DNA of 64,000 nucleotides from Styela clava (GCF_964204865.1 NC_135253.1:16616001-16680000), one strand, 5' to 3'. Shown: positions 33,553 to 63,308, counted from the first letter of the stretch. The notes: generated by a model from the sequence alone, not told the origin. Program-made: numbers and translations.

Positions 33553-35140
33553 TTAATTACTGAACCATTTTGCTGCTTTAAACACACAAAGGTTGAAAAA
33601 GAGTAGAGGGAACGAAAAAACTGTTGAAATCCCTCCACACGTTGTGGTAGCAGCCGCAGTAGTAGTAGCAGTTACTACGCATGCCGCTTCCGAGGCTTCA
33701 TAACCAGATTTACATGCACATTTTCCTGTCGAGGTGTTGCATTCCGAGTTGGCGTCACCATTGGTTGTGCAGTCGGAGGTCGCTGCACATTTTCTGTCAA
33801 CACAAGCTGTTGCCCCAGGGATCTGATTTACTGGACATGCGCACTGTGATGATACGCAGTAGAGAGTGCTGGATCCACAAGCAGATGTGATTGTAGTTGC
33901 TGTGCAAGCTTTGGGTGTACACGATCCAGATGAAGCGTCGGCATCGGAAAGAAATCCACAGGTGCATCCGGTGGTTCCAGTTGTAGCACAATAAGAATGA
34001 GCTTCGTTGATAAAACAATCTCTGTCACCATTGCTGCAGGTACGACGCACACATGCAGTGTGTGACGTATCGACGAAGTTATCTTTGCAGTTGCAAACGT
34101 CGATCGCGGGAGTCGTATTGCAGTAACTGTTGGCATCGGAGGGTGTGCAGTCACTATCACCAGCATTGCATGTCATTGCTTCGCAGCCAGTAGTTGTGGG
34201 AGCGGGCTGTAAAATTTGACATGAAAAATAAATTAATTCTGTATCTTATAACTTCATTTGCGAAATAGTTTTGGTATCAACTGGATCTAATGCCAGCTAA
34301 CACTATAGCTATTTCTAGGGGTTTGACATAAAGTTGTGTTAGAAAATCTGTTGTACATCACTTTAATACAAAAATCGAAAACATAATATGTTAAATAGCT
34401 CTTCAGTTTGCAATCTGCATGATTAAAGATTCTCCGGTAATGAGCTTACTTCAGTTTTGGTATTACTCGAGGTGAATGAAAATAAATTATATATTTTATT
34501 ATATCTTGAATTTTATTGTTTAAGCTGAGTCCATTGGCAAAAGCTCACATGAATATTTTGATAATTTGAGTGCTCAAATACTTTTTGATTACTCTTACCG
34601 TATAATTGACATCACACACGCAAAGTATTGGAGAAGCAGAGTTGCACGTACTTGCGTTTGGTTCGCCTGTACATGTACCACCTGCGGCTGAGCAAGTTCC
34701 GTCCAATTGACTCAGACCTGTTATTAAAAAAACTTGCCTTGCCGTCTGTTTCTTAATTTTATTGTTATTTAAAACGTTATCCATCTATAATTTAATAAGT
34801 TTTTTTCAATTTCACGATTCAGTTAAATAATAGGCTTGTTTTGAAAATATTTCTGCATTAATTTTATTGTTATTTAAAACGTTATCCATCTATAATTTAG
34901 ACGTTTTTTTTCAATTTCACGATTCAGTTAAATGATAGGCTTGTTTTGAAAATATTTCTGCATTCACTATTTTAAATCAATTTTTAGAGTAAATAAATAT
35001 TGTTTGGTAAAGGAGAAATTGAAAACAAAATTGTCTCAAGAAACGACGTTTTTATAAATTTATCTAGTTTAAAGTGATAACTATACTTCACCTCCTCTTG
35101 TCATGAACAAAACACACAGCATAGAAACCAAAACCCTCAT
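33553..35140 (-). CDS. Tandem family copy A: five 6-Cys EGF-like modules, Thr stalk, GPI-type tail, ~273 aa
   Basis: Exons 35140-35092 (MRVLVSMLCVLFMTRG), 34717-34599, 34206-33553. GT-AG introns of phase 1 and 0, frame intact. Confidence 0.88.
34755..34965. repeat. ~103-bp tandem duplication in intron 1 of copy A only
   Basis: TTAATTTTATTGTTATTTAAAACGTTATCC...TTTCTGCATT occurs twice here and once in copies B, C and E. Confidence 0.85.
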
Positions 35141-36385
35141 TTTAATTGTTGTTAAGATTGATGAATCTTCGAATATTCGTCGATTTATGCTGTAATATTT
35201 GAAACAGAAATTTAGTATTATGGATTATTAACAAAGAAATTCCCCGTCCTGTCTCCCTCACGAAAATTTCGACGAAGCCAATTCCTATATTATCATTGCG
35301 CGAATAACTTTTTAAAATTACTTCAAGGATTAAATAGTTTTCAGCAGCTCTTGATAAGTACATAGCTATCATGCTATGGCGAACAGGATCTTTTTTACTC
35401 GGCACAGACCTACCACGATATCAAACAGTAGATATATTTATTGTCTTAATGTTTACATATTTTAAGATTATAAAGACAAAACTCGGGTCGCGTAAACTGC
35501 CGATTCCTAATTAGCCGACGAAAAACACAGCCCGACAATGGAAATGTCCATGTCAACTTCATTTTTCATCTGATGAAGTTATGGTAATTAAATTATTTTA
35601 TGTATATTGCATATGTTATGCATCAATTACATTGGATTTCCGAACTAAAAATCCGTTTCAAAATCGGTTCGCTTACAGTTTACACTATGTATCTACAAAT
35701 GCCAACTTTCTTGACGACATCCCATGCATTGAGTATGGTACAAATTACCATTGCTCATTGAGTATATTCAAGACATATTGGGATACGATGAACGACGAAC
35801 GGCAAGAAAGTATATTGATTGAAAAAATTATTACGACTCACCCAGTCTGGTAATCTTATTTAACTGGTAAATATCTCCAAGCGTAATGGTTCATTTGGTG
35901 ATCGTTTGCGGTTTTTATACTGAATCACCGCAGAAAAAGATTCCTTTGGATGAATGAAAGAGAATACTATTTGTATGAGAACTAGCGACTTTCACTCATA
36001 ACAAACACACTCTTTCCGATATGCTAACCCGTTTGGTTCCAAGACCTACTTAATATGTCGTCAACGACATTTTCGTCATTTGATTTTGGGAATGAATTCT
36101 CTCATATTATTACCGCAAGCAATATCAGCCAAATCCGTGTAACTTTTTGGGTTTTCAATATTTTATCATCAACTTAGAGTTTTTTGAATTATCCATATTA
36201 GGTCGAACGTTTATGCATAAAATAATATTATCGCGTAATATCAAATGAGATCAATTATTTCACAATATCGCTTCAAAATGGAGACGTTCACTCGACCAAA
36301 ACTGATACGAAACTAGGAGTTTTTTTTTAACTACCCTTTAAGAAAATTGAATTTATTTAATGGAAGCGTTGTTGACATTATACAT

Positions 36386-37182: not shown

Positions 37183-37630
37183 CTGATATACATGTTTCAT
37201 GTGATAAGTGTTGTTAGTTAGTTGTCATTCAACTTCGAGCGTCAGAATAACGAGTCTGTATTGGTATAGTAATTGTTAGCAGATGGACACGATACGCACG
37301 ATAATACTTATTCGGTCGTACGGAAAATTAAATGGGACGCCGGGATTTTGGGGGTGCGGGAACTCATAGCGATATTATGTTGTACTGAAATGCTGATTGC
37401 ATTTTACCACTTGGTGTGTTAGAATAAAGTATTTATTATTATAATTTACACTTCTGTATATCGTATGTTATACTTTCATCGTAAAATAAATATGCCAAAA
37501 GGTATTTTGCACACACTTTGACCTCGTAATTTGAAATAAGATGTTGACGTGAGCACCTCCGCGTCTGAGGTACGTTTGATTTTGGAATCATCATAATGCA
37601 AAATTCGCTCCAAAAAGCATTTCAGCACAC

Positions 37631-40048: not shown

Positions 40049-41510
40049 TTAATTACTGAACCATTTTGCTGCTTTAAACACACAAAGGTTGAACAGGAGT
40101 AGAGAGAACGAAAAAACTGTTGAAATCCCTCCAGACGTTGTGGTAGCAGCCGCAGTAGTAGTAGCAGTTACTACGCATGCCGCTTCCGAGGCTTCATAAC
40201 CAGATTTACATGCACATTTTCCTGTCGAGGTGTTGCATTCCGAGTTGGCGTCACCATTGGTTGTGCAGTCGGAGTTCGCTGCACATTCTCTGTCAACACA
40301 AGCTGTTGCCCCAGGGATCTGATTTACTGGACATGCGCATTGTAATGATACGCAGTAGAGAGTGCCGGATCCACAATCAGATGTGATTGTAGTTGCTGTG
40401 CAAGCTTTGGGTGTACACGATCCAGATGAAGCGTCGGCATCGGAAAGGAATCCACAGGTGCATCCGATGGTTCCAGATGAAGAACAATAAGAATGAGCTT
40501 CGTTGATAAAACAATCTCTGTCACCATTGGTGGTGCAGGTACGACGTTCACATGCGGAGAATGACGTATCAACAAAGTTATCTTTGCAGTTGCAAACGTC
40601 GGTCGTGGGAGCCGTATTGCAGTAAGTGTTGGGAGCCAGACCGGTACAGACACTATCAGCATTGCATGTCTTTTTTTCGCAACCAGTATCCGGAGTATCG
40701 GGCTTTAATATTAGACATAAAAAATAAATTAATTCTGTATCTTGTATCTGACCAATTTATTTGCAAAAATAATTTTCTTATCAACTGAAACTAATGCCAG
40801 CTAACACGATGATTATTTCTAGGCGTTTTGAAATAAAGTTTAATACAAAATCGGAAACAAATCCCGAATAACTCTTCAGTTTGCAATCTGCATGACAAAA
40901 GATTCTCCAGTGATAAGCTTATCTCAGTTTTGGTATTACTCGAGGTGAATGAAAATAAATTATATCTTTCATTGAATCTTAATTTTTTTTTTAGTTTTAA
41001 TCATTAGCAAAAGCTCACGCACATATTTTGATAATTTGAGTTCTCAATTACTTTTTGATAATCCTTACCGTATAATTGACATTACACACGCAAACAGGAG
41101 GAGTAGCAGAGTCACACTTATCTGCGTTTGGTTCGCCTGTACATGTACCAGCTGCGCCTGAGCAAGTTCCGTCCAATGCACTCAGACCTGTTATAAAAAA
41201 AAACTTGCCTTGTCGTCTAGTTCCTAATTTTATTGTTAAGTTAAAACGTTATCGACCTATATTTTAGTCGTTTCTTCAATTTCACGATTCAGTTAAATGA
41301 CGGGCTTGTTTTGGAATTTTTTCTGCATCTACTATTTTAAATCAATTTTTAGAGTAAATAAATATAGTTTGGTAAAGAAGAAATTGAAAAATAAAAAAAT
41401 TTGTCGCAAAAAACGATGTTTTTTTAAATCTATCTAGTGTAAAGTGATAACTATACTTCACCTCCTCTTGTCATGAACAAAACACACAGCATAGAAACCA
41501 AAACCCTCAT
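40049..41510 (-). CDS. Tandem family copy B, ~273 aa
   Basis: Exons 41510-41462, 41187-41069, 40702-40049, frame intact. The exon-3 acceptor is AAG instead of CAG. Missing from the ORF track because exon 3 has no suitable start codon. Confidence 0.82.
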
Positions 41511-46803: not shown

Positions 46804-48263
46804 TTAATTACTGAACCATTTTGCTGCTTTATATACACCAAGGTTAAAAAGAAGTAGAGGGAAAGAAAAAACTGTTGAAATCCCTCCAGACGTTGCAGTA
46901 GTTGTAGTTGCTGTAGTAGTTGTAGTAGTGGATGCTACGCATGCCGCTTCCGAGGCTTCATAACCAGATTTACATGCACATTTTCCTGTCGAGGTGTTGC
47001 ATTCCGAGTTGGCGTCACCATTGGTTGTGCAGTCGGAGGTCGCTGCACATGCTCTCTCAACACAAGCTGTTTCCCCAGGGATCTGATTTACTGGACATGC
47101 GCACTGTGATGATACGCAGTAGAGAGTGCCGGATCCACAAGTAGATGTGATTGTAGCTGTTGTGCAAGTTTTGGGTGTACACGATCCAGATGAAGCGTCG
47201 GCATCGGAAAGGAATCCACAGGTGCATCCAGTTGTAGCACAATAAGAATGAGCTTCGTTGATAAAACAATCTCTGTCACCATTGGCGCAGCTACGACGTT
47301 CACAGGCAGTGTGTGACGTATCAACAAAGTTATCTTTGCAGTTGCAAACGTCGGTCGTGGGAGCCGTATTGCAGTAAGTGTTGGGAGCCAGAGTAGTGCA
47401 GACACTGTCAGCATTGCATGTCTTTGCTTCGCAGGCATCATTCGGGGTATTGGGCTGTAAAATTTGACATGAAAAATAAATTAATTCTGTATCTTATAAC
47501 TTCATTTGCGAAATAGTTTTGGTCAACTGGATCTAATGCCAGCTAACACTATAGCTATTTCTATGGGTTTGACATGAAGTTGTGTTGGAAAATCTGTTGT
47601 ACATCACTTTAATACAAAAATCGAAAACATAATATGTTAAATAGCTCTTCAGTTTGCAATCTGCATGATAAAAGATTCTCCGGTAATAAGCTTACTTCAG
47701 TTTTGGTATTACTCGAGGTGAATGAAAATAAATTATATCTTTCATTATATCTTGAATTTTATTGTTTAAGCTGAGTCCATTAGCAAAAGCTCACATGAAT
47801 ATTTGGATAATTTGAGTGCTCAAGTACTTTTTGATTATTCTTACCGTATAATTGACATCACACACGCAAAGTGCAGGAGCAGGGCTGCACGTATTTGCGT
47901 TTGGTTCTCCTGTACATGCACCGCCTGTGCAAGCGCTCAATTGACTCAGACCTGTTAAAAAAAAAACTTGCCTTGCCGTCTGGTTCTTAATTTTATTGTT
48001 AATTTAAAACGTTATCCACCTATAATTTAGACGTTTTTCCAATTTCACGATTCAGTTGAATGATAGGCTTGTTTTAGGAATTTGTCTGCATCTACTCTTT
48101 TAAAATTTAATCAATTTTTAGAGTAAATAAATGTAGTTTAATCAAAAAAAAAAATGTCGCAAAGTACGACGTTTTTATAAATTTATCTAGTGTAAAGTAA
48201 TTACTATACTTCACCTCCTCTTGTCACGAACAAAACACACAGCATAGAAACCAGAACCCTCAT
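46804..48263 (-). CDS. Tandem family copy C, ~268 aa
   Basis: Exons 48263-48215, 47951-47845, 47454-46804. In-frame deletions in modules 1 and 3. Confidence 0.86.
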
Positions 48264-49921
48264 TTTAATTGTTGTTAAGATTAATGAATCTTCGAATATT
48301 CGTCGATTTATTCTGTAATATTCGAAACAGAAATTTAGTATTATGGGTTATTAACAAAGAAATTCCCCGTCCTGTCTCCCTCACGAAAATTTCGACGAAG
48401 CCTATTTCTATCATATCCTCGCGCGATTAACTTTTTAAAATTACTTTGATAAATAATTAGTTTTCAGGGTTAGTTCATTTATTTTTGTTTATAATAATAA
48501 AAAATTAATAGCATTTATTTTGAATGTTTCAGAATTCATTTTCGACCAAGGCATTGGTTAAGCAGCCCCTGATAAATACATGGCTATCATGCTATGGCGA
48601 ACAGGATCTTTCTAACTCGGCATTGCCCTACCATGTTATCAAACAGTAGATATATTTATTGTCTTAATCCTAGCGTAAACTGCCGGTTCGTAATCAGCGG
48701 CAAAAAACACAGTCAGACAATGGAAATGTTCATGTCAACCTCATTTTTTTTCCGATGAAGTTATGGTAAATAAACAATTTTATATATTGTTTACACAAAT
48801 TGGATTCCCAAACAAAAATCCGTTTCAAAACCGGTTCGCCTACAGTTTACACCATGTATCTACAAAATCCAACTTTCTTAAGACAACATCATATGACTAT
48901 TCCTGCATTGGTTCGAGTTACCATTGCTCATTGGGTATATTCAAGACATATTGGGTTACAAATAACTATACGAATTTTAGCATGAGAACGACGAACGGTA
49001 AGAAAGTATATTGATTGAAAAAATCATTAGACTCACCCAATCTCGCAACGTTATTCAACAGGTAAATATCTTCAACCGAATGCTTCATTTGATGATAGTT
49101 TGCAGTTTTTATACTGAATCACCGCAGAAAAAGATTTCTTTGCTTGAATGAAAGAGAATACTATTTGTTTGGGGACTAGCGAACTTCGCTTATAACAAAA
49201 GCACTCTTTCCGATATGTTATTGGTTGCAATACCTAATTTACATGTCGTCAACGACATTTTCGTCTTTTGATTAAGGACAATGAATTCTTTCATATTATT
49301 ACCACAAGCCATATCAACCAAGTCCGTGTAACTTTTGGGGTTTTCAGTATTTTAGCATCAAATATTTATACAATTCACAGTTTGTTAAATTATTCATATT
49401 AGGTCGAACGTTTATGCATAAAATGATATTATCGCATAATATCACAAATGAGATCAATTGTTTCACAATATCGCTTCAAAATGGCGACGTTCACACGATC
49501 GAGGTTGTTACTAAACAAGGATTTCATTAACTCTCCTTCGAGAAGATTAAATTTAATGCAAGCGTTTTTGACAGTTGTTTCATATGCTAGGTGTTGTTAT
49601 TCGGTTGCCATTCAATTTCCAGCGTCAGAATACCGAGTCTGTAATGGAATATTGTAATGGTTAGCAGATGAACACGATACGCGCGATAATACTTGTTGGA
49701 TATTAGTCCTTTTATGAAATACCACTTACGACTGTTGTTATTCAAACGGTTAACGGTCGTAGGGAAAAATAAATAAAACGCTGGGATTTAGGTGGGTGCG
49801 ATATTATGTTGTACTGAAATGCTGAATTTCCTTTCAACATTTAGTGTGTTAGAATGGAGTATTTATTATTATAATTTACACTTCTGTATCTCGTATGTTC
49901 TATTTTTATGGTAATATATAT

Positions 49922-50031
49922 GGCGCTCCCGGAGTATGTGTACCAAGATGACGCACAACCTGAACATAGTATGTGTACCAGGTGAGGGTTCAGGTTGCGC
50001 GCTACTTTGGTACACATACTTCGGGAGCGCC
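49922..50031. mobile_element. 110-bp Merlin-like MITE (upstream of C)
   Basis: GGCGCTCCCG..GTATGTGTACCAA / TTGGTACACATAC..CGGGAGCGCC. Same insertion site as the 45250 and 59900 copies. Confidence 0.7.
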
Positions 50032-51689
50032 ATAAAAATATGCCTTTTGCAAGCTATTTTGTACACACTTTGACCTCATACTTTGAAATAAAATGTTGAC
50101 GTGAGCATCTCGGCATCTGACGTAAGTTTGTTTTGGGGATCATTATAATATAAAACTAAGTCAAAAAGAGTCATATGAGTGTCTATTATGGTGAACGTAT
50201 AAGCCATAATGAGCTAGAAATTTCCAAGCGCATGCGACAGTCACCATACTTTTCCAACTAGTTATTTGTCTATTGCTGAAGGCGTTCACTTTGCATCTGT
50301 TTAAAGCTCTAAGATACAATACCAAGGTCTCAACAAGCCGTTTCATTTGGGGTCCGTTTCTAAAGAAATACATGTGTTGCACAAGCTACAAACTGGACTC
50401 CAGACAAGTAGTCGATGTGATGTACAACCCATTTGAACACGTTATATTGTTTGGGTGGTTTTGTATTCAAGTTGTTGCCTGGACAGGATCCTGCCATATA
50501 AATTTGATATTTTATTAAAATAAAACGCATTGCGGTATAATTTTGTAAAAGTTGTCAACTGATGCCAATTATGATGATCTAATGAATTTGAGCCATGATA
50601 CTTTGCCAATATCAGAAGAGTGGGCGTATCTTAGCTACAAATCCTACTCTGTTGAGCTTAAATCAGATATTTCTACTGGGATGGTTGGCTATGTTGAGTT
50701 TCGCTTTATTCGAGAATAGCACTGGCTATCGGTGTCCAGTTGACTTCATATAGAGAAACTTGCAATATGAAAAGTGGTTGTTGCTAATGTTTTTAAAATT
50801 TTTATTCTTGGAATTATTTGAATACGTTAGTTAAAATGTAACGTTCTTTTTAGTGTCCAGTATTAGCATCGGAGTATGCACCGGCTTATTTTTTTTCAAA
50901 CTTTCTGATTGGAGCTGAAATTCTTAATGAGCAGAAGTTAAGTAAAATTTCTGTAGCAAAATTTCCTGCGGTACAAACTTTCTACGCAAATTTTTTTCAA
51001 TGGAGTAGAAATTTCAAGCGATACCAACTAATATTTTCTATTTTTCGTAGTCTATTATCTAGCTAGATTGTATGGATTTGAAGTTGCAGTCAAATTTATT
51101 TTACACGGCGTGCAATCTTTGAGACAATGAACATTCGAATGTAGCAAGTAGAGTCGAGTTTTGAATAATTCGTAGAAGTATAGAAGTTCCAGACACTTCT
51201 TGGAATCTATCTGTAAGCAACACCTGGGGGAAATTTACGAGTAAACTTTTCACTCTGAAAAGACTATTCTACTTCAAACTCTCGTTTTGCAATAAGCGTT
51301 AGTTAATAAGCAAAAGTTCTGCATTTTTAATTTGCGGATTCGTCTCACCGCAAAATCTCAACATAAAAGTTGTTAACTTTGATATTGGCTGCGTATTTAT
51401 TTTTTTCATAAACTAGATTACGGAAAAAAAACTCTGTATATTGTTTCAACTTTTTTTTTATTAATTGAAGCTGCCATAAAACTTTATACTTGAAATGGGA
51501 TCAGGAAAGATTCCATCAAATCTTTTCCAAGCATTAGTTACTACTAAAATCGTATAAAATAAAGTATATATTGTATTTTCCTAGCAAGTTGAACAAATAT
51601 TCATCTGAAAATATTATTAATAAAATTGCCAAACTCATTGAAAAATTACTGATTTGAATATATATTTCAGCACGCTGTAACGTTAATTA

Positions 51690-53228
51690 TCAATTACTGA
51701 ACCATTTTGCTGCTTTAAACACACAATAGTTGAAAAGAAGTAGAGGGAACGAAAAAACTGTTGAAATTCCTCCACACGTTGCAGTAGTTGTAGTTGCTGT
51801 AGTAGTAGTAGTTGTAGTAGTGGATGCTACGCATGCTGCTTCCGAGGCTTCATAACCAGATTTACATGCACATTTCCCTGTTGAGGTGTTGCATTCCGAA
51901 TTGGCGTCACCATTAGTTGTGCAGTCGGAGGTCGCTGCACATGTTCTGTCAACACAAGCTGTTGCCCCAGCGATCTGATTTGCTGGGCATGCGCACACTG
52001 ATGATACACAGTAGAGAGTGCCGGATCCACAAGCAGATGCGATTGTTGATGTTGTGCATGCTTTGGCTGTACACGATCCAGATGAGCCGTCGGTAGTGGA
52101 AAGAAATCCACAGGCGCATCCGATGGTTCCAGATGAAGAACAATATGAATTAGCTTCGTTTACAACACAATCTCTGTCACCATTGGCGCAGGTTCGACGT
52201 ACACAGGCAGCGTTTGACGTATCGACAAAGTTTGCCTTGCAGTTGCAAACGTCGGTCGTGGGAGCCGTATTGCAGTAACTGTTGGTATCGGAAGGGGTGC
52301 AGTCACCATCACCACTAGCGCATGTCCTTGCTGTGCAGTCAGTATTCGGGGTAGCAGGCTGTAAAATTAGTCATGAAAAATAAATCAATTCTGTATCTTG
52401 TAACTTCATTTGCGAGATAGTTTTGGTATCAACTCGAACTAATGCCAGCTAACACAATGATTATTTCTAGGCGTTTTAACGGAAACAAATTTTAAATAGC
52501 TCTTCAGTTTGCAATCTGCATGATAAAAGATTCTCCGGTGATAAGCTTACTTCAGTTTTGGTTTTACTCGAGGTGAATAAAAATAAATTATATATTTTAA
52601 TATATCTTGAATTTTTTAGTTTTAATCGAATACTTATTCTTTATCCTTACCATATAATTGACATTACACACGCAAAGTGGAGGAGTAGAAGAGTCGCACA
52701 AAGCTGCGTTTGGTTCGCCTGTACATGTACCACCTGCGCCTGAGCAAGTTCCGTCCAATTGACTTAGACCTATTAGTTACAAAAAAATGCCGTCTTTTTT
52801 TATGAATTTATTGTTAATTCGTTATTTTTCAAATTAAAATTTACTACACGATCTGCCAACCGAATCTTTTGACTGCAGACTGAAGTACAAAATTGTTTGA
52901 AAACATTTTAATTTTACTCAAATATTTTTTTCATAAATGATTCGTACAATATTGAATTTTACGACTCAATTATTTTAGGTTTGTGTTTATTTTGGCATTT
53001 CGTCTACATCTGCTATTTTAAAAACTTGTTCAATATTTTGAATCAATAAATGTAGTTTATAAAGGAGAAAACAGGTCAGATGAAATTTTTGCAATCTCAT
53101 TTACATAAAAAATATTTTTATAAATGAATTTAGTGTAAACTAGCTACGAGAATTTTTTTTCAATATTGAAATACTTCACCTCCTCTTGCCATGAGCAAAA
53201 CACACACGATTGAAATCAAAATCTTCAT
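51690..53228 (-). CDS. Tandem family copy D (type-II leader), ~278 aa
   Basis: Exons 53228-53180 (MKILISIVCVLLMARG), 52769-52651, 52358-51690, frame intact. Confidence 0.87.
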
Positions 53229-53880
53229 TCTCTTCGTTTTCGTTTTATTTCTGGATTAAAATTACTCGAGTGCTAGCTGGTTTATTCTGCAAGTACTAAA
53301 TTTAAAATATGTATTAAACTTAAATTGAGTTTTAAAAATTATAAACCTTGAATAGTGATTTTTTGGGGGGATTGCGGGTACTTTATGGAAAAACCTAACA
53401 AAAAACGTAAAGCTCTAGTAATAATACTCTTCGCCCACAATATTATAAAGCAATACTTATTTGATCAAATGCAAAATAAATTGTGGCGCTTATGGCAGCT
53501 AATATTTGCATCTCTTAGTTAGTAATAAAACTTTTTTCATATTTTATGTCGGTTTAAAAATGCCCTCTGAATTGGATATATTGTTGTCAAATTTTTCAGA
53601 TGACAAATAAACGTTTATCAGCGGTATCAGCGGTTTCCAAGCATTTCATACGCAATCTCTTCATAATGGTTTTAAATAGCTTTACTGTTCCGAAAAGATC
53701 AACAATTGATAAGTCAGTATTAGCAAATATGACATTGTTATCTATGACTTGGGCAATATACCAATTGAATCTTACTGGAGAACTTCTGCACCACAACATA
53801 ATATAATACATAACTATATTTATGTTCCATCGGCTCGCTATGTCTGTTGTACTATAGTCTTACAAATATGGTACGGTTCG

Positions 53881-54078
53881 CAACCGTTATATATACTCAT
53901 ATTCGCGTTGATAACTATGGTAAAAAAAAACTGTTATTCCTATTCCCTTCTAATGTTTTTCTTATTTTTTCGTGCGTTTTCAACCGTTATATATACTCGT
54001 ATTCGCGTTAATAACTATGGTAGAAAAAGATTATTATTCTTATTTCCTTAGAATGTTTCTCTTATTTTTTCGTGTGTT
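53881..54078. repeat. ~100-bp tandem duplication
   Basis: CAACCGTTATATATACTC.TATTCGCGTT.ATAACTATGGTA...TTCTTATTTTTTCGTG occurs twice. Confidence 0.8.
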
Positions 54079-56669
54079 TCGCGTGACAACGTAGACGGAT
54101 TCGCACTACTGGATATTTGGATCGCACGAAATGCCCCGTTGAAAAGCGCACCTTGACAGCACAAACCTGATTTTAATTTTTTTTTAATCCTTCGTGGAGA
54201 TCCCTTGAATGCGTTACCCATGTTTCAAAAAGTGTTTAAAGACCTTGTATCAAGTTGGCATGGCAATCTAAAAGGATACACAAGGTATCAACATAACATG
54301 AGCGATGCTGAAAAAAATTCAATTTGTTATTTTTGCCCATCCACCTAAAATTAATTCACGAAATATTGTTACCATATTCATGCTGGTGTTAGAGCCTGAA
54401 TATGCTTAGCTGAAATTATTAGGTTCTATTGTGATCGAATGTGAAATCTGATAACAGGTATATTGGAGGCCTTTCCACTCACCAGTCCTTTTTCCTGTCA
54501 AGTTCAATCGCTCTGAAATATACTATTAGATTTTTATGTTTTGAAAATTACGTGTGGTAGGTACAATGTGTTTTCAATTGAAAAATAAGAGCATTCATTT
54601 CTCTTACCAGTTGGAGAAACGGTATGCTTGTCTCTTGTTGTGTTATTTATTCTTAGTATCTTGGCTGCCATAGAAAACTTCTATAGAAAACATAGGCGGA
54701 TAGTGACGACCGTTAGTATAAAAATAATATATATATGCACAATAGTCTAGTAGCTATGGGATACACATCAACTTAAATTATATTTCAGAATATATCGGCC
54801 AATAGAATTCTAAAATTAGGTTTCAATATTCTACTTATTTTTATTTATAATATCTAAGTTACGGAAATGTTAATCATAAAAGTTGAGAAAAATTGTTGAA
54901 GATAATTTCAGAAAAAATATTACCTTGTTAATATTTACAAAACTAAAACAAGAAGTAATAGTCTTATCGTAGCTGGATCATTTTTTTTAAAATTTGGTCT
55001 CAGTATGTTGATCCCTCGCTGTTGGTACAATACAAGTTTTCTAGAAGTTTTAGTCTGAGCTTAGTTGGAAATTATTAGAAAAAAACTTAAATGTTATTCC
55101 CAATTACCATTCGTATGTCCTTCTCCGTTTAAGGCTTTATCTTGAACATAATTAAATATATTGCAATTAGATTTTAACGCAGTCGTGCTAATGGAATGGG
55201 TAAGCCTGCTCATGAAGTCCGCTATTCGAATGTGTTTTCTTTACTTCTATATTGCGCAAAGCACGGCAATTGGAAAGCATAAGGGCGAGATGTTCTTTTT
55301 ATCCCATGATTACACCAGTTTGTAGAACAATGATTCACTCGTCCAAGCATGAAGAATATTATAATTTAGATTTGGAAGTTGTTTTTAAGTAGAGAAATAA
55401 TTTTGTTAACAAACTATGGATTTTTATAACATTGTTGACGACGTTACGGCGGGGCTTATACGACTTTTACTTTCGTTTATCCGGCAGATTTTCTCTATGA
55501 ATATAAATGTTTTACTCAATAGTTGAAAAATGACATTTATCCGCTTGAATTGATTTCAAAGGAGAATATTTACAAGTAAAGTTGTCTATGAAATTCATGT
55601 AATCGTATCATGCCTCATAGTGTGTTGAACGCGAATTTTGATTTCAAATATAAATTTATAGCTTATGCATATGGTTTTATCCAGAGATTTTTTATTTTCA
55701 TTTACTGCCTGTGTGTATGGATATTCTATGTATCGTAGTGATAAGATTTATATTTAGAGTGGAAATCGAATGAAACCCATGTCATTGGATGATTATTTAA
55801 CAAAACAAATGTATGCGTTATGTATGGTATGGCGCCGGTCACTTGTACAGGTCTTTGGACTCGTAGGTGAAGCGATAACATGGATAAGGGTGGGTGTACA
55901 AAACTGGTCGTACAGGCGAATCCATATGAAAAGTCAACATATGAAAATAAATACAATATACCCTCATTTACAGAGAAATATTCACTTAACCTGGCTTTAA
56001 ATGAGAGGAAGATTTGCGCAGTTGTTTGCTACAAGGTTTTATGCTTACAAATCCAATTTTATTGCGCTCGGCGGTCCAAATAATTTGTAGAAGTCAATTT
56101 TTCTACTTTTGAAATTTTATTCCATGTATATATTTCAAAAAAATTACCGCCGAACTTCGGCGCGTCGACGTAACCTTTAAAGAAAGAACCTTTATGAATT
56201 TACTGTATAGTTTCATCAAGAAACTAAAAATGTGTTATAAAAGATGGAAGTAGGATACTTGTGTGTAGACCCCCGTATATTGATATCAAAATGAACATAG
56301 TTTCACTCTTCAATCAAAAAATAAATGAGCGTGCATCAGTCAGTCGCTGGAGGCTTCTAAAGGTGCGTTTCCAGTACTATGTGTAACGAACACAGATTAC
56401 GGAAAAAAAACTCCGTATATTGTTTCAACTTTTTTATTTATTAATTGAAGCTGCCATAAAACTTTATACTTGAAATGGGATCAGGAAAGATTCCATCAAA
56501 TCTTTTCCAAGCATTAGTTACTACTAAAATCGTATAAAATAAAGTATATATTGTATTTTCCTAGCAAGTTGAACGAATATTCATCTAAAAATATTATTAA
56601 TAAAATTGCCAAACTCATTGAAAAATTACTGATTTGAATATATATTTCAGCACACTATAACGTTAACTA

Positions 56670-58152
56670 TTAATTACTGAACCATTTTGCTGCTTTATAT
56701 ACACCAAGGTTGAAAAGAAGTAGAGGGAAAGAAAAAGCTGTCGAAATCCCTCCAGACGTTGCAGGAGTTGTAGTTGCTGTAGTAGTAGTAGTTGTAGTAG
56801 TGGATGCTACGCATGCCGCTTCCGAGGCTTCATATCCAGATTTACATGCACATTTTCCTGTTGAGGTGTTGCATTCCGAGTTGGCGTCACCATTGGTTGT
56901 GCAGTCGGAGGTCGCTGCACATGCTCTCTCAACACAAGCTGTTGCCCCAGGAATCTGATTTACTGGACATGCGCACTGTGATGATACGCAGTAGAGAGTG
57001 CCGGATCCACAAGCAGATGCGATTGTAGTTGCTGTGCAAGCTTTGGGTGTACACGATCCAGATGAAGTGGAAGCGGAAAGGAATCCACAGGTGCATCCAG
57101 TGTCTCCAGATGTAGCACAATAGGAATTAGCTTCAGTGATAAAACAATCTCTGTCACCATTGGCGCAGGTACGACGTACACAGGAAGTGTGTGACGTATC
57201 AACAAAATTCACTTTGCAGTTGCAAACGTCGGTCGCGGGAGCTGTATTGCAGTAACTGTTGGTATCGGAAGGGGTGCAGTCACCATCACCACCACTGCAT
57301 GTCCTTTCTATGCAGTCATTATCCGGGGTAGTAGGCTGTAAAATTAGACATGAAAAATAAATTAATTCTGTATCTTGTAACTTCATTTGCGAAATAGTTT
57401 TGGTATCAACTGGATCTAATGCCAGCTAACATTATAGCTATTTCTAGGGGTTTGACATGAAGTTGTGTTGGAAAATCTGTTGTACATCACTTTAATACAA
57501 GAATCGAAAACATAATATGTTAAATAGATCTTCAGTTTGCAATTTGCACGATAAAAGATTCTCCGATGATAAGATTACTTCAGTTTTGGTATTACTCGAG
57601 GTGAATGAAAATAATTTATATCTTTCATTATATCTTGAATTTTAAGTCCATTAGCAAAGACTCACATGAATATTTTGATAATTTGAGTGCTCAAGTACTT
57701 TTTGATTATTCTTACCATATAATTGACATTACACACGCAAAGTGGAGTAGGATCAGAGTTGCACGTATTTGCGTTTGGTTCGTTTGAACATGTACCACCT
57801 CCGCCTGAGCAAGTTCCGTCCAATTGACTCAGACCTGTTATAAAAAAAAACTTGCCTTGTCGTCTGGTTCTCAATTTTATTGTTAATTTAATAAGTTATC
57901 GACCTACAATTTAAACGTTTTTTCAATTTCACGATTCAGTTGAATGATGTGCCTGTTTTGGGAATTTGTCTGCATCTACTATTTTAATTCAATTTTTAGA
58001 GTAAATAAATATAGTTTGATAAAGAAGAAATTGAAAACAAAATTGTCTCAAAAAACGACCTTTTTATTAATTTATCTAGTGTTAAGTAATTACTATACTT
58101 CACCTTCTCTTGTCATGAACAAAACACACAGCATAGAAACCAAAACCCTCAT
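56670..58152 (-). CDS. Tandem family copy E, ~277 aa
   Basis: Exons 58152-58104, 57834-57716, 57335-56670, frame intact. Confidence 0.88.
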
Positions 58153-59899
58153 TTTAATTGTTGTTAGGATTGATGAATCTTCGAATATTCGTCGATTTAT
58201 GCTGTAATATTTGAAACAGAAATTTAGTATTATGGATTATTAACAAAGAAATTCCCCGTCCTGTCTCCCTCACGAAAATTTCGACGAAGCCTATTTCTAT
58301 CATATCCCCGCGCGATTAACTTTTTAAAATTACTTTGATAAATAATTAGTTGTCAGGGTTAGTTCATTTATTTATGTTTATAATAATAACAAATTGATAG
58401 CATTTATTTTGGATGTTTCAGAATTCATCTTCGACCAAGGCATTGGTTAAGCAGCCCCTGGTAAATACATAGCTATCATGCTATGGCGAACAGAATCTTT
58501 CTAACTCGGCATTGCCCTACCATGTTATTAAAACAGTAAATATATTTATTGTCTTAATGTTTAATTTTTTTTAAGATTATAAAAACAAAAATAATCCAGA
58601 TGTAACGAGTCGCGTAAACTGCCGGTTCATAATCGGCGGCAAAAAACAAAGTCAGACAATGGCAATGTTCATGTCAACTTCATTTTTCGTCTGATTAAGT
58701 TATGGTAGATAAACTATTCTATATATTGTTTACATAAAAAGCATATGTTTATAAATCAATTAAATTGGATTCCCAAACAATAATCCGTTTCAAAACCGGT
58801 TCGCTTACAGTTTACACTATATATCTACAAATTCCAACTTTGTTAAGACGACATCATATGACTATTCCTGCATTGAGTATGGTTCAAGTTACCATTGCTC
58901 ATTGAATATATTCAAGACATATTGGGATACGAATAACTATACGAATTTTAGCGTGAGAACGACGAACGGTAAGAAAGTATGTTGATTGAAAAAATTATTA
59001 TACTCACCCAATCTCGCAATGTTATTCAACGGGTAAATATCTTCAACCGAATGCTTCATTTGATGATAGTTTGCAGTTTTTATACTGAATCACCGCAGAA
59101 AAAGATTCCTTTGGATGAATGAAAGAGAATACTATTTGTTTGGGGACTAGCGACTTTCGTTTATAACCAAAGCACTCTTTCCGATATGTTAACCCGTTTG
59201 GTTGCAATACCTAATTTACATATCGTCAACGACATTTTCGTCTTTTGATTAAGGGCAATGAATTCTCTGATATTATTACCACAAGCCATATCAACCAAGT
59301 CCGTGTAACTTTTGGGGTTTTCAGTATTTTAGCATCATCTATTTATACAACTCACAGTTTGTTAAAATATTCATATTAGGTCGAACGTTTATGCATAAAA
59401 TAATACTATCGCATAATATCAAATGAGAATAATTGTTTCACAATATCGCTTCAAAATGGCGACGTTCACACGAACGAAGTTGTTACTAGACAAGGATTTC
59501 ATTAACTCTCCTTCGAGAAGATTAAATTTAATGTAAGGGTTTTTGACAGTTGTTTCATGTGCCACGTGTTGTTATTCGGTTGCCATTCAACTTTCAGCGT
59601 CAGAATACCGAGTCTGTAATGGAATATTGTAATGATTAGCAGACGAACACGATACGCGCGATAATACTTGTTCGATGCTAGTCCTTTTATGAAATACCAC
59701 TTACGACTGTTGTTATTCAAATGAGATAACGGTCGTAGGGAAAAATAAATGAAACGCTGGGATTTAGGTGGGTGCGATATTATGTTGTACTGAAATGCTG
59801 AATTTCCTTTCAACATTTAGTGTATTAGAATGGAGTATTTATTATTATAATTTACACTTCTGTATCTCGTATGTTTTATTTTTATCGTAATATATATAT

Positions 59900-60009
59900 G
59901 GCGCTCCCGGAGTATGTGTACCAAGATGACGCACAACCTGAACATATTATGTGTACCAGGTGAAGGTTCAGGTTGCGCGCCACCTTGGCACACATACTTC
60001 GGAAGCCCC
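59900..60009. mobile_element. 110-bp Merlin-like MITE (upstream of E)
   Basis: Same element at the same site as the 45250 and 49922 copies. Confidence 0.7.
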
Positions 60010-61682
60010 ATATAAATATGCCAAAAGCTATTTTGAACAAACTTTGACCTCATAATTTGAAATAAAATGTTGACGTGAGCATTTCGGCATTTGATGTACG
60101 TTTATTTTTGAAATCATTATAATATAAAATTCTGTCAAAAATCATGTTTAGCACACATTTGGAACAACAACATATGAGTGTCTTCTATGGTGAACGTATA
60201 AGCTATAATGAGCTAGAAATTTCCAAGCGCATGCGACAGTCACCATACTTTTCCAACTAGTCATTTGTCTATTGCTGAAGGCGTTCACTTTGCATCTGTT
60301 TAAAGCTCTAAGATACAATATCAAGGCCTCAACAGGCCGTTTCGTTTGGGGTCCGTTTCTAAGGAAATACCTGTGTTGCACAAGCTACAAACTGGACTCC
60401 AGACAAGTAGTCGATGTGATGTACAACCCATTTAAACACGTTATATCGTTTGGGTGGATTTGTATTCAAGTTGTTGCCTGGACAGGATCCTGCTATATAA
60501 ATTTGATATTTTATTAAAATAAAACGCATTGCGGTATAATTTTGTAAAAGTTGTCAACTGATGCCAATTTTGATGATCCAATGAATTTGAGCCATGATAC
60601 TTTGCCAATATCAGAAGAGTTGGCGTATGTTAGCTACAAATCCTACTCTGTTGAGCTTAAATCAGATATTTCTACTGGGATGGTTGGCTATGTTGAGTTT
60701 CGCTTTATTCGAGACTAGTACTGGCTATCGGTGTCCAGTTGACTTCATATGGAGAAACTTGCAATATGAAAAGTAGTTGTTGTTACTGTTTTTAAATTTT
60801 TTATTCTTGGAATTATTTGAATACGTTAGTTAAAATGTAACGTTCTCTTAAGTGTCCAGTATTAGTATCGGAGTATGCACCGGCTAATTTTTTTCAAACT
60901 TTCTGATTGGAGCTGAAATTCTTAATGAGCAGAAGTTAAGTAAAATTTCTGTAGCAAAATTTTCTGCGGTACAAACTTTCTACGCAAATTTTTTTCAACG
61001 GAGTGAAAATTTCAAGCGATACCAACTAATATTTTCTATTTTTCGTAGTCTATTATCTAAATTGTATGGATTTGAAGTTGCAGTCAACTTTATTTTACAC
61101 GGCGTGCAATCTTTGAGATAATAAACATTCGAATGTAGCAAGTAGAGTCGAGTTTTGAATAATTCGTAGAAGTATAGAAGTTCCAGACACTTCTTGGAAT
61201 CTATCTGTAAGCAACACCTGGGGGAAATTTACGAGTAAGCTTTTCAATCTGAAAAGAATATTCTACTTCAGACTCTCGTTTTGCAATAAGCGTTAGCTAA
61301 TAAGCAAAAGTTCTGCATTTTTAATTTGTGAATTCGTCTCACCGGAAAATCTCAACATAAAAGTTGTTAACTTTGATATTGGCTGCCTATTTATTTTTTT
61401 CATAAACTAGATTACGGAAAAAAACTTTGTATATTGTTTCAACTTTTTTTTTATTAATTGAAGCTGCCATAAAACTTTATACTTGAAATGGGATCAGGAA
61501 AGATTCCATCAAATCTTTTCCAAGCATTAGTTACTACTAAAATCGTATAAAATAAAGTATATATTGGATTTTCCTAGCAAGTTGAACAAGTATTCATCTG
61601 AAAATATTATTAATAAAATTGCCAAACTTATTGAAAAATTACTGATTTGAATATATATTTCAGCACACTATAACGTTAATTA

Positions 61683-63308
61683 TCAATTACTGAACCATTT
61701 TGCTGCTTTATACACACAAAAGTTGAAAAGAAGTAGAGGGAAAGAAAAAGCTGTTGAAATTCCTCCACACGTTGCAGTAGTTGTAGTTGCTGTAGTAGTA
61801 GTAGTAGTTGTAGTAGTGGATGCTACGCATGCTGCTTCCGAGGCTTCATAACCAGATTTACATGCGCATTTTCCTGTCGAGGTGTTGCATTCCGAGTTGG
61901 CGTCACCATTGGTTGTGCAGTCGGAGGTCGCTGCACATGCTCTCTCAACACAAGCTGTTGCCCCAGGGATCTGATTTACTGGACATGCGCACTGTGATGA
62001 TACGCAGTAGAGAGTGCCGGATCCACAAGTAGATGCGATTGTAGCTGTTGTGCATGCTTTGGGTGTACACGATCCAGATGTAGCGTCGGCATCGGAAAGA
62101 AATCCACAGGTGCATCCGGTGGTTCCCGTTGTAGCACAATAAGAATGAGCTTCGTTGATAAAACAATCTCTGTCACCATTGCTGCAGCTACGACGTACAC
62201 AGGCAGTGTGTGACGTATCAACAAAGTTATTTTTGCAGTTGCAAACGGCGGTCGTGGGAGCCGTATTGCAGTAACTTTCTGGTTCGGTGCAGTCACTAGC
62301 ACCACTAGGGCATGCTTTTGCTTCGCAGTCAGTAGTTGCGCCATTGGGCTGTAAAATTAGTCATGAAAAATAAATTAATTCTGTATCTTGTAACTGCATT
62401 TGCAAAATAGTTTTGGTATCAACTGGATCTAATGCCAGCTAATACCATAGCTATTTCTAGGGGTTTGACATAGAGTTGTGTTAGAAAATCTGTTGTACAT
62501 CACTTTAATACAAAAATCGAAAACATAATATGTTAAATAGCTCTTCAGTTTGCAATCTGCATGATTAAAGATTCTCCGGTAATGAGCTCACTTCAGTTTT
62601 GGTATTACTTGAGGTGAATGAAAATAAATTATATCTTTCGTTATATCTTGAATTTTATTGTTTAAGCTGAGTCCATTAGCAAAAACTCACATAAATATTT
62701 TGATAATTTGAGTGCTCAAGTACTTTTTGATTATTCTTACCGTATAATTGACATTACACACGCAAAGTGGAGTAGGAGTAGTAGAATCACACGTATCTGC
62801 GTTTGGTTCGCCTGTACATGTACCACCTGCGCCTGAGCAAGTTCCGTCCAATTGACTTAGACCTGTTAGTAACAAAAAAATTGCCGTCTTTTTCATGAAT
62901 TTATTGTCAATACGTTATTTCTAAATAAAACTTTACTACACAATCTGACAACTGAATCTTTTGACTGCAGACTAAAGTATAAAATTGTTTTAAAAGTTTT
63001 AAATTTTACTCATAAATGATTCCTACAATATTGAATTTTACGACTCAATTATTTTAGGTTTGTGTTTATTTTGGCATTTTGACTACATCTGCTATTTTAA
63101 AAACTTATTCAATATTTTGAATCAATAAATGTAGTTTTGTAAAGGAGAAAACAGGTCAGATGAAATTTTTGCAATCTCATTTACATAAAGAATATTTTTA
63201 TAAATGAATTTAGTGTAAACTAGGTACGAGAATTTTTTTTCAATATTGAAATACTTCACCTCCTCTTGCCATGAGCAAAACACACACGATTGAAATCAAA
63301 ATCTTCAT
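61683..63308 (-). CDS. Tandem family copy F (type-II leader), ~278 aa
   Basis: Exons 63308-63260, 62862-62741, 62348-61683, frame intact. Confidence 0.87.

What the first reader, a model, noticed from the sequence alone, without database searches (positions are those of the whole stretch)
33553..63308. Tandem array of six GPI-type EGF-module proteins with variable distal modules and an invariant proximal core: candidate recognition locus
Seen: six intact paralogs, each signal peptide + five 6-Cys modules + Thr stalk + hydrophobic tail. The module-5 core SDCTTNGDANSECNTSTGKCACKSGYEASEAAC is identical in all six. Modules 1-3 differ by many amino-acid changes and in-frame indels with all Cys kept, for example the start of exon 3: A PAPTTTGCEAMTC, B PDTPDTGCEKKTC, C PNTPNDACEAKTC, D PATPNTDCTARTC, E PTTPDNDCIERTC, F PNGATTDCEAKAC. 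By eye these exon parts look more diverged than adjacent introns and spacers. Known: this polarity is typical of immune, allorecognition and gamete-recognition surface proteins, and EGF-repeat proteins serve such roles in ascidians (vitelline-coat VC70). Inference: an unrecognised diversifying surface receptor or antigen family.
Basis: partly seen in the sequence, partly recalled or inferred. Interest (0 to 1): 0.88.

Follow-up and report, generated by a model that had tools for sequence, protein, structure and literature searches.

The report
Six variable-tipped EGF-like surface genes
The sea squirt Styela clava carries six neighbouring copies of a species-restricted, probably cell-surface protein whose two outermost modules stay different between copies while the rest is kept alike, which fits a recognition molecule, but neither expression nor function could be tested here.

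Summary
Window 33553-63308 (Styela clava) has six intact three-exon genes on the minus strand. Each encodes a signal peptide, five 6-Cys EGF-like modules, a Thr stalk and a weak hydrophobic tail (268-278 aa). The 33-residue module-5 core is identical in all six, with 7 synonymous and 0 non-synonymous changes.

Variation is concentrated in modules 1-2. There 49 of 92 codon columns vary in amino acid and 23 hold three or more residues. Pooled dN/dS falls from 1.1 in M1 to 0.2 in M5.

"Exons more diverged than introns" is only partly true. It holds against intron 2 in copies A, C, E and F (9% variable sites against 29-32%, p 1e-7 to 1e-10). It does not hold against intron 1 or for copies B and D. 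Synonymous sites show the same excess, so the distal coding segments are older than the intron between them. The copies are recombinant mosaics.

My own site-model test, using a separate tree per block, supports positive selection in M1-M2 only (LRT 13.2; bootstrap p about 0.02-0.05).

The only relatives are two other S. clava genes. Public records call these genes "copper metallothionein 2-like" or "uncharacterized".

Verdict: a real, new, fast-evolving surface family; the recognition role is plausible but unproven.

The parts
33553..35140 (-). Gene A (273 aa). Exon 3 is 33553-34206, exon 2 is 34599-34717, exon 1 is 35092-35140. 5' end of class I.
40049..41510 (-). Gene B (273 aa). Exon 3 is 40049-40702, exon 2 is 41069-41187, exon 1 is 41462-41510. 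Identical to NCBI protein P0009 (LOC144422229).
46804..48263 (-). Gene C (268 aa). Exon 3 is 46804-47454, exon 2 is 47845-47951, exon 1 is 48215-48263. Identical to NCBI protein P0002 (LOC144422222).
51690..53228 (-). Gene D (278 aa). Exon 3 is 51690-52358, exon 2 is 52651-52769, exon 1 is 53180-53228. 5' end of class II, with a different signal peptide, promoter region and intron 1.
56670..58152 (-). Gene E (277 aa). Exon 3 is 56670-57335, exon 2 is 57716-57834, exon 1 is 58104-58152. 5' end of class I.
61683..63308 (-). Gene F (278 aa). Exon 3 is 61683-62348, exon 2 is 62741-62862, exon 1 is 63260-63308. 5' end of class II.
34207..34598 (-). Intron 2 of gene A, as an example. It occurs only in the six genes. 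Identity to A is 97, 95 and 91% in C, F and E, but 76-77% in B and D. It lies between the two most variable coding segments.
33679..33801 (-). Module 5 of gene A. Its last 33 codons are the invariant core: 7 synonymous and 0 non-synonymous changes across the six genes. The same module lies at 40175-40297, 46939-47061, 51831-51953, 56811-56933 and 61827-61949.
34051..34206 (-). Start of exon 3 of gene A: the end of module 1, the inter-module linker and module 2. Together with exon 2 this is the hypervariable part. Block omega is 1.84 for the first 28 codons.
48673..62466 (-). Two copies of a two-gene unit of about 10 kb, [C,D] and [E,F]. Window 48673-52476 matches 58612-62466 at 91.9% and 46528-48668 matches 56394-58558 at 91.1%.
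18696..21997 (-). Neighbouring large relative with an open frame of about 1106 aa. It consists of many of the same 6-Cys modules plus a hydrophobic tail. It is 50% identical to modules 2-5 of A-F and has no Pfam family.

Best explanation
The six genes encode a Styela-restricted family of small secreted-pathway glycoproteins displayed on a cell surface. Each has a cleaved signal peptide, a rod of five EGF-like disulfide modules and a Thr-rich stalk that is probably O-glycosylated. The C-terminal signal is more likely a GPI-attachment signal than a short transmembrane anchor; its candidate omega site reads S/C-G-G.

The array grew by unequal crossing-over, including duplication of a two-gene unit. 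It is continually exchanged by gene conversion. Conversion together with purifying selection keeps the membrane-proximal scaffold (M3-M5, above all the M5 core) and intron 2 alike. Selection preserves and promotes amino-acid differences in loops of the two membrane-distal modules and in the linker between them. The animal therefore displays a panel of related molecules with different tips.

Shown here: anatomy, mosaicism, the polarity of constraint, the greater age of the distal exon parts, and moderate statistical support for omega above 1.

Inferred: surface display, the GPI anchor, glycosylation, and that the distal tip is a binding face for a fast-changing partner. That partner could be conspecific cells or gametes, or microbes. 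Which one cannot be told from sequence.
For: Anatomy and gene models.

Polarity of constraint:
- NG86 pooled dN/dS is 1.10 (M1), 0.71, 0.64, 0.94 and 0.21 (M5).
- Changes at codon positions 1, 2 and 3 number 28/21/13 in M1 and 1/2/8 in M5.
- 49 of 92 M1-M2 columns vary in amino acid and 23 hold three or more residues, against 3 of 41 in M5.
- The M5 core has 7 synonymous and 0 non-synonymous changes, p 3e-5.

Site models (own GY94 code):
- One tree for M1-M2: LRT of M2a against M1a is 12.7.
- A separate tree per block: LRT 13.2 for M1-M2, with about half the sites at omega 2.7. For M3-M5 the LRT is 2.05, not significant.
- Parametric bootstrap: 1 of 43 null replicates reached 13.2.

Exon islands among A, C, E and F:
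- Variable sites are 9% in intron 2, 29% in exon 2 and 32% in the first 147 nt of exon 3 (p 7e-7 and 7e-10). M4 has 7.7% and M5 5.7%.
- Synonymous divergence at codons with identical amino acids is 0.207 in M1-M2, 0.074 in M3-M5 and 0.047 in intron 2.

Mosaicism: PHI permutation p at or below 0.001 and long identical runs between copies. Module 2 comes in two cassette types.

Between individuals: P0001 from the older reference differs from every copy here by at least 11/48 residues in M1 and 9/44 in M2, but by 1-2 in M3, M4 and M5 against A or B.

Tail: the candidate omega position alternates only between S and C, followed by an invariant GG. The hydrophobic core is 14-17 aa, with mean hydropathy 1.5-2.1.
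Against: - Only six sequences from one assembly were available, and recombination is strong, which inflates site-model tests. The bootstrap p value is only about 0.02-0.05, and the code is my own rather than PAML or HyPhy.
- The counting method gives dN/dS near 1, not clearly above it, in M1 and M2.
- For pairs that include B or D, exon and intron 2 divergence are similar. Intron 1 and the 5' flank are more diverged than any exon.
- The M1 framework is the best conserved part against the distant paralog P0012, so variability is limited to particular loops.
- There are no expression data and no population data, and no GPI predictor was available. The tail ends in a basic stretch (KAAKWFSN) that is invariant even in DNA, which would also fit a stop-transfer anchor with a short cytoplasmic tail.
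- Only two of the six models were found as annotated proteins in the searched collections.
Confidence: 0.55

Rival explanations
1. Relaxed constraint plus concerted evolution, with no recognition role. The distal loops simply tolerate change (omega near 1). Gene conversion happens to homogenise the 3' two thirds of the gene and intron 2, and the high divergence of the distal segments then blocks further conversion there.
For: NG86 omega is 0.7-1.1 in M1-M2 and 0.72 overall. M0 omega of 1.2-1.3 is not far from 1. Conversion is clearly active. Bootstrap support for omega above 1 is modest.
Against: - A neutral intron lying between two neutral exon segments should not be the only part homogenised, yet intron 2 is 4-5 times less variable than both of its flanks in four copies.
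- Codon positions 1 and 2 change more than position 3 in M1, p 0.02.
- 23 columns hold three to five residues among six sequences.
- M3-M5 have similar base composition but show no such excess.
Confidence: 0.25
2. A specific version of the main reading: an egg-coat or sperm gamete-recognition family working like Halocynthia VC70/VC80.
For: - Stolidobranch ascidians use a polymorphic EGF-repeat protein on the vitelline coat. Its variable sites lie between Cys3 and Cys4 and in the connecting regions between EGF domains (PMC9265791).
- Several of the sites that my models flag lie in the same kinds of place: the Cys3-Cys4 loop of M1 and the M1-M2 linker.
Against: - No sequence similarity to any Halocynthia protein in an exhaustive HMMER search.
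- No ZP-domain precursor.
- Five modules, not 12-13.
- A membrane anchor instead of a coat-matrix protein.
- No tissue data.
Confidence: 0.12
3. Part of the array is an assembly artefact. The two 10-kb two-gene units [C,D] and [E,F] are diverged haplotypes of one unit placed in tandem, so some 'paralog' differences are really allelic.
For: The two units are colinear at about 92% identity. Ascidian genomes are very heterozygous. Alleles of the related gene on contig C8 differ by 14% in the module region between two references.
Against: - 8% non-coding divergence is high for alleles.
- A and B are further copies in any case.
- The older reference annotation joined three different first exons to one gene, which implies several copies in that individual too.
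- I could not test read depth.
Confidence: 0.1
4. The genes are metallothioneins, as the older RefSeq name 'copper metallothionein 2-like' says.
For: Only the high Cys content, about 12%, and the database name.
Against: The proteins have a signal peptide, regular 6-Cys modules with C-x-C only between Cys4 and Cys5, a Thr stalk and a hydrophobic tail. No metallothionein family appeared in the Pfam scan. From general knowledge, metallothioneins are cytosolic proteins of about 60 aa.
Confidence: 0.01

Closest known systems
Styela clava LOC120328339 (P0012/P0003, 598 aa, contig C8; formerly named 'eyes shut homolog')
   Same: It is the true nearest relative. It is colinear with A-F from the signal peptide through module 5 (36% identity, E 8e-41). 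The M1 framework is especially similar.
   Different: It has one extra module after M1. It then continues with a calcium-binding EGF domain, a VWA-like stretch, another EGF domain and a TSP1 repeat. It has no Thr stalk and no hydrophobic tail, so it is a secreted multidomain protein.
The neighbouring large gene in this window (18696-21997)
   Same: It uses the same unrecognised 6-Cys module type, is 50% identical to modules 2-5, has a hydrophobic C-terminal tail and lies in the same cluster.
   Different: Its open frame is about 1106 aa with many tandem module pairs expanded by a young coding repeat. It has no Thr stalk, and its module 5 sequence is not the A-F core.
Plasmodium ookinete surface proteins P25/P28 (Pfs25, Pfs28, Pvs25)
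   Same: The architecture matches: signal peptide, four tandem EGF-like modules and a GPI anchor, about 200 aa. They are the top rows of both Foldseek searches and of the language-model look-alike search.
   Different: All matches are weak (best E 2e-3, TM below 0.2, cosine 0.86). A-F get no hit to the Pvs28 Pfam family. The organisms are unrelated, so this is an analogy of design, not kinship.
Halocynthia HrVC70/HaVC80 vitelline-coat sperm receptor
   Same: It is a stolidobranch ascidian EGF-repeat protein that differs between individuals at restricted loop and connecting-region sites (PMC9265791).
   Different: It has 12-13 repeats cut from a ZP-domain precursor and sits in the coat matrix rather than on a membrane anchor. 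No sequence similarity was detected.
Botryllus fuhc-sec (histocompatibility candidate of a styelid ascidian)
   Same: A highly polymorphic secreted-pathway protein with EGF domains, from the same ascidian family, encoded in a locus with variable gene content (PMC12065747).
   Different: [quoted passage not shown] Its polymorphism is spread over the protein with no hypervariable region, it is a single gene, and no similarity to A-F was found.
MHC-type pattern: old exon lineages with homogenised introns (from my own knowledge of the HLA class I and DRB intron literature)
   Same: The ligand-facing coding segments coalesce much deeper than the adjacent introns, which are homogenised by recombination or conversion.
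   Different: Here the pattern is seen between tandem paralogs of one assembly, not yet between alleles, and the protein fold is unrelated.

Membership tests
EGF-like domain (Pfam EGF clan) | Six Cys per module with a single residue between Cys4 and Cys5 | tested here: met
   All five modules of all six genes have the spacing C-x(4-8)-C-x(6-9)-C-x(4-8)-C-x-C-x(10-12)-C, with 4-residue linkers.
EGF-like domain (Pfam EGF clan) | Score above the curated threshold of a Pfam EGF-type model | tested here: not met
   The only hit is EGF_laminin at 15-17 bits against a cut-off of 21, on module 5 in two of the three copies scanned. Copy A has none. Profile searches against PDB sequences gave nothing significant. 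The neighbouring cbEGF genes score at 1e-9 to 1e-44 in the same test.
EGF-like domain (Pfam EGF clan) | EGF signature C-x-C-x(2)-[GP]-[FYW]-x(4,8)-C (pattern recalled from memory of PROSITE EGF_2) | tested here: inconclusive
   Module 5 matches exactly in all six genes. Modules 1 and 2 match only a relaxed form, and modules 3 and 4 do not match.
EGF-like domain (Pfam EGF clan) | EGF fold, as judged by structural matches | tested here: inconclusive
   The AF2 models have pLDDT 62.6 and 75.0 and are built of beta-hairpins. The best matches are EGF-repeat proteins (Pfs25, NELL, SCARF1, uromodulin, MSP1-19) and knottins. All are weak: E at or above 2e-3 and Z at or below 2.6. Disulfide pairing could not be read.
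GPI-anchored protein | N-terminal signal peptide | tested here: met
   By inspection only. Exon 1 encodes M-R/K followed by 11-12 hydrophobic residues and a small-residue end. No predictor was available.
GPI-anchored protein | Small residues at the omega site and at omega+2, followed by a short spacer | tested here: met
   All six genes have [S/C]-G-G after the Thr stalk. The first position varies only between S and C, both of which are permitted omega residues according to the known rules.
GPI-anchored protein | Hydrophobic C-terminal segment that runs to the end of the protein | tested here: inconclusive
   The hydrophobic core is weak (14-17 aa, containing S, T, P and N; mean hydropathy 1.5-2.1), which is more like a GPI signal than a transmembrane helix. 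It is followed by an invariant basic 8-mer, which would also fit a stop-transfer anchor.
GPI-anchored protein | Release by PI-PLC, or a call from a trained predictor | not testable with these tools
   No NetGPI or big-PI was available, and no bench work was possible.
Ascidian VC70/VC120 family | 12-13 EGF repeats cut from a precursor with a C-terminal ZP domain, with sequence homology | tested here: not met
   A-F have five modules, no ZP domain and a membrane tail. An exhaustive HMMER search found only S. clava proteins and generic Cys-rich hits.
Diversifying recognition locus (operational definition) | Non-synonymous excess at restricted sites of the exposed part | tested here: inconclusive
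   LRT 13.2 for M1-M2 with block-specific trees (chi-square p 0.0013; bootstrap 1 of 43 replicates). Omega by counting is near 1.
Diversifying recognition locus (operational definition) | Binding-part coding segments older than the neighbouring non-coding DNA | tested here: met
   Met for copies A, C, E and F against intron 2 and against M3-M5, also at synonymous sites. Not met for pairs that include B or D.
Diversifying recognition locus (operational definition) | High allelic polymorphism in populations, and expression in a tissue where recognition takes place | not tested
The only hint is one protein from an older reference that differs mainly in M1-M2.
Metallothionein | Short cytosolic Cys-cluster protein without a signal peptide | tested here: not met
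   See the anatomy. The name comes from an automatic annotation.

The most novel reading that the evidence does not exclude
The array is a polymorphic, multi-copy self/non-self recognition locus of a solitary styelid ascidian, acting in blood-cell or tunic allorecognition or in gamete self-sterility. It would be built from EGF-like modules rather than Ig domains. Specificities would reside in the two distal modules, persist as old lineages, and be reshuffled between tandem copies by gene conversion. This would be an EGF-based counterpart to the exon and intron pattern seen at the MHC.
Probability: 0.2. Interest if true: 0.85.

Novelty: new variant of a known kind. Interest (0 to 1): 0.55.

Why it matters
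How solitary stolidobranch ascidians tell self from non-self, both at fertilisation and between blood cells, is only partly known. The candidates studied so far (VC70, Themis pairs, the Botryllus fuhc genes) belong to other families.

This locus gives a compact and easily genotyped candidate. It consists of six small genes with a defined hypervariable tip and a conserved scaffold that could serve for antibodies or primers. It also comes with two relatives that show where the module type originated.

Whatever its function, it is a clear animal example of concerted evolution stopping exactly at the edges of the coding segments under selection. It also corrects a misleading public name, "copper metallothionein 2-like".

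Tried and rejected

Searches that gave nothing decisive:
- Pfam on exon-3 products gave only a sub-threshold EGF_laminin hit.
- PDB sequence searches with a whole-exon profile and a single-module profile found nothing significant.
- Foldseek and VIA-align on two AF2 models gave weak EGF-repeat and knottin rows only.
- The ESM Atlas gave weak look-alikes, with P28, EB and EGF clusters at 0.86 or below.
- Rfam on the array gave no family, so a known RNA gene in the conserved intron 2 is not supported.
- Intron 2 as a repeat element is rejected, because it occurs only in the six genes.
- A silent library of extra exon-2 or module-2 cassettes as conversion donors is rejected, because none exists elsewhere in the assembly.
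- Literature searches on S. clava plus these names found nothing about these genes.

Computation:
- The first bootstrap run timed out.
- A single-tree site-model test on the whole mature region (LRT 36) was set aside as probably inflated by recombination.

Searches used single exons by reference, or the database proteins P0002 and P0009, which equal models C and B. Exons were concatenated only inside local scripts, to build the codon alignment.

Full report
**What is there**

The window is Styela clava DNA (G000 contig C4:16616001-16680000). A degenerate probe for the module-5 motif hits six times on the minus strand, against 0 expected by chance.

Each gene has three exons with GT/AG splice sites:
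- Exon 1 is 49 nt and encodes the signal peptide. It ends in phase 1.
- Exon 2 is 107-122 nt and encodes most of module 1.
- Exon 3 is 651-669 nt. It encodes the last Cys of module 1, modules 2-5, the Thr stalk and the tail.

The products are 268-278 aa and pairwise 76-85% identical. Models C and B are identical to NCBI proteins P0002 and P0009, so an independent annotation arrives at the same splicing.

Thirty Cys columns are invariant. Each module has the spacing C-x(4-8)-C-x(6-9)-C-x(4-8)-C-x-C-x(10-12)-C, with four-residue linkers.

No further close copy exists in the 377-Mb assembly. The only relatives are a large gene in this same window (18696-21997, 50% identical over modules 2-5) and one gene on contig C8.

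**Is it EGF, and is it GPI?**

The Cys pattern is EGF-like, and module 5 fits the classical C-x-C-x2-G-Y signature (the pattern is recalled from memory). However, no Pfam EGF model reaches its threshold. The best is EGF_laminin at 15-17 bits against a cut-off of 21. Three neighbouring genes in the window score as calcium-binding EGF at 1e-9 to 1e-44 in the same test.

Profiles against PDB sequences find nothing. The AF2 models have pLDDT 62.6 for the exon-3 product and 75.0 for modules 4-5, and consist of small beta-hairpin modules. Their best structural rows are EGF-repeat proteins, led by Plasmodium Pfs25/Pfs28, and knottins. All are weak. I therefore call the modules EGF-like, with membership unproven.

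The tail reads [S/C]-G-G, then a weak hydrophobic stretch of 14-17 residues that contains Ser, Thr, Pro and Asn, then an 8-residue basic end that is invariant even at the DNA level. The small-residue triplet and the weak, short hydrophobic core favour a GPI signal. The basic end would also suit a stop-transfer anchor. My estimate is about 65:35 in favour of GPI, and this is untested.

**Polarity of variation**

The 33-residue module-5 core is identical in all six genes, and this is not merely recent copying. Its 99 nt carry 7 synonymous and 0 non-synonymous changes (p 3e-5).

Pooled Nei-Gojobori dN/dS is 1.10 (M1), 0.71 (M2), 0.64 (M3), 0.94 (M4), 0.21 (M5) and 0.44 (stalk and tail).

In M1-M2, 49 of 92 codon columns vary in amino acid and 23 hold three to five different residues among six sequences. 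In M5 only 3 of 41 columns vary. Many hypervariable codons change at the first or second position while keeping the third. Changes at codon positions 1, 2 and 3 number 28/21/13 in M1 and 1/2/8 in M5.

The variable patches are:
- the end of the Cys2-Cys3 loop, the Cys3-Cys4 loop and the Cys5-Cys6 loop of M1;
- the linker between M1 and M2;
- the Cys1-Cys2 and Cys2-Cys3 loops of M2.

**Exons against introns**

Among copies A, C, E and F, intron 2 has 34 variable sites in 378 (9%). Exon 2 has 31 in 107 and the first 147 nt of exon 3 have 47 in 147 (Fisher p 7e-7 and 7e-10). M4 and M5 are as quiet as the intron (sliding windows).

Intron 1 and the 5' flank are far more diverged (46-50%). This is because D and F carry a different class of 5' end, with their own signal-peptide exon and upstream sequence. 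In pairs that include B or D, intron 2 is about as diverged as the distal exons.

The exon excess is not only non-synonymous. At codons that encode the same amino acid, synonymous divergence among A, C, E and F is 0.207 in M1-M2, 0.074 in M3-M5 and 0.047 in intron 2. So the distal coding segments have a genuinely older common ancestor than the intron lying between them. M3-M5, which have similar base composition, serve as a control against a simple mutation-rate explanation.

Intron 2 is not a repeat element and matches no known RNA family.

**Mosaicism**

The array includes a duplicated two-gene unit, with [C,D] and [E,F] at about 92% identity.

Different segments give different relationships:
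- 5' flank: D groups with F, and C with E.
- Intron 2: A, C, E and F group together.
- 3' flank: C, D, E and F group together.
- Stalk: A groups with B.

A PHI-type permutation test (p at or below 0.001) and permutation tests on the longest identical runs confirm recombination or gene conversion. Module 2 occurs in two cassette types that do not follow the unit duplication. There is no silent store of extra cassettes elsewhere in the genome.

**Test for positive selection**

PAML is not installed, so I wrote a Goldman-Yang codon model with F3x4 frequencies and the M0, M1a and M2a site classes.
- With one tree for M1-M2, the M2a-M1a LRT is 12.7.
- To limit recombination artefacts I gave each of six blocks its own tree and branch lengths and shared only the selection parameters. 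M1-M2 then gives LRT 13.2 (chi-square p 0.0013), with about half the sites at omega 2.7.
- M3-M5 gives LRT 2.05, which is not significant.
- Block omegas are 1.37, 1.84, 0.60, 0.73, 1.15 and 0.29.

In a parametric bootstrap under the fitted M1a model, 1 of 43 replicates reached 13.2 and 2 of 43 exceeded 5.99. The test is therefore roughly calibrated, and the empirical p value is about 0.02-0.05.

This is moderate support, not proof. There are only six sequences, recombination within blocks remains possible, and the code is my own.

**Variation between individuals**

The older RefSeq annotation, from another assembly, has one gene with isoforms that join three different first exons to the same exons 2 and 3 (P0001, P0010, P0011). 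Its mature protein matches no copy here. It differs from every copy by at least 11 of 48 residues in M1 and 9 of 44 in M2, but from A or B by only 1-2 residues in each of M3, M4 and M5. Whether it is an allele or an extra paralog, the difference between individuals lies in the same distal modules.

The C8 relative shows a similar effect. Its two RefSeq versions differ at 43 of the first 300 residues (the module run and the first cbEGF domain) against 7 of the remaining 298.

**Relatives and range**

An exhaustive HMMER search of 1.84 billion representative proteins found only S. clava proteins, plus generic Cys-rich hits at E above 1e-5. A word-indexed search of 5.8 billion proteins found the same two clusters. 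A search with the module region of the C8 protein found only its own other version.

The C8 protein P0012 is colinear with A-F from the signal peptide through module 5 (36% identity, E 8e-41). It has one extra module and then continues with cbEGF, a VWA-like stretch, EGF and TSP1. The A-F genes therefore look like the N-terminal module run of a secreted matrix-type protein that has been placed on a mucin stalk and a membrane anchor.

Absence from other tunicates is weak evidence, since few tunicate proteomes are present in these collections.

**Interpretation**

The best reading is a surface-displayed family with two parts under different regimes. Purifying selection and gene conversion hold the proximal scaffold constant. 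Selection keeps the distal two modules different and pushes them apart.

The pattern resembles MHC genes, where peptide-binding exons are old and the introns are homogenised (from my own knowledge). In the placement of its variable sites it also resembles Halocynthia VC70 (PMC9265791). It is not a member of the VC70 family, of the Botryllus fuhc-sec family (PMC12065747) or of the P25/P28 family. The metallothionein name is wrong.

What the tip binds cannot be decided from sequence. Candidates are conspecific gametes, blood cells or microbes.

The main rival is relaxed constraint combined with conversion. It explains omega near 1 but does not explain why only the intron between two variable exon parts is homogenised.

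A further caveat is that I could not check read depth. The [C,D] and [E,F] units might therefore be haplotypes placed in tandem.

**Limits**

Expression, copy number and alleles are therefore untested.
Exon-by-exon references and the database proteins P0002 and P0009 were used instead.

Noticed in passing
window 18696-21997 (-), repeat at 20254-21722: A large relative of the A-F genes with an open frame of about 1106 aa. It is made of many of the same 6-Cys modules and has a hydrophobic tail. A tandem coding repeat with offsets of about 229 bp, at 88-92% identity, lengthens it. Pfam finds no family in it.
   Followed up: partly
window 9830-10672 (+), 12393-13001 (-), 16230-16883 (-): Three further small open frames encode genuine calcium-binding EGF repeats (Pfam E from 1e-9 to 1e-44), each ending in a hydrophobic tail. 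The whole 55-kb stretch is therefore a cluster of tail-anchored EGF-type surface genes.
   Followed up: partly
L008 (G000:C8:16872332-16875769); proteins P0012 and P0003: The two RefSeq versions of this gene come from two assemblies. They differ at 43 of the first 300 residues (module run plus first cbEGF) but at only 7 of the remaining 298. This is a very uneven and very high difference between individuals.
   Followed up: partly
proteins P0001, P0010, P0011 (older RefSeq): Three 'isoforms' share exons 2 and 3 but start with three different first exons: class I with G, class I with E, and class II. The cause is either read-through splicing between tandem copies or a collapsed array in the older assembly.
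   Followed up: no
window 53180-53228 and 63260-63308 against 35092-35140, 41462-41510, 48215-48263 and 58104-58152: There are two classes of 5' end. D and F share a signal-peptide exon, intron 1 and upstream sequence (0.3% different over 300 bp) that cannot be aligned with those of A, B, C and E. This suggests two regulatory classes that alternate along part of the array.
   Followed up: partly
window 43459-44117; 34753-34964; 53881-54079: Non-coding tandem repeats within the array: a 292-bp unit x2.3 between B and C, a 105-bp x2 duplication inside intron 1 of A (which accounts for its extra length), and a 100-bp x2 repeat upstream of D.
   Followed up: no
window 994-2961 (+): A long open frame of about 655 aa that is very rich in acidic residues, at the left end of the window. 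Other notes of this scan link it to an FKBP-domain gene at 229-6123.
   Followed up: no
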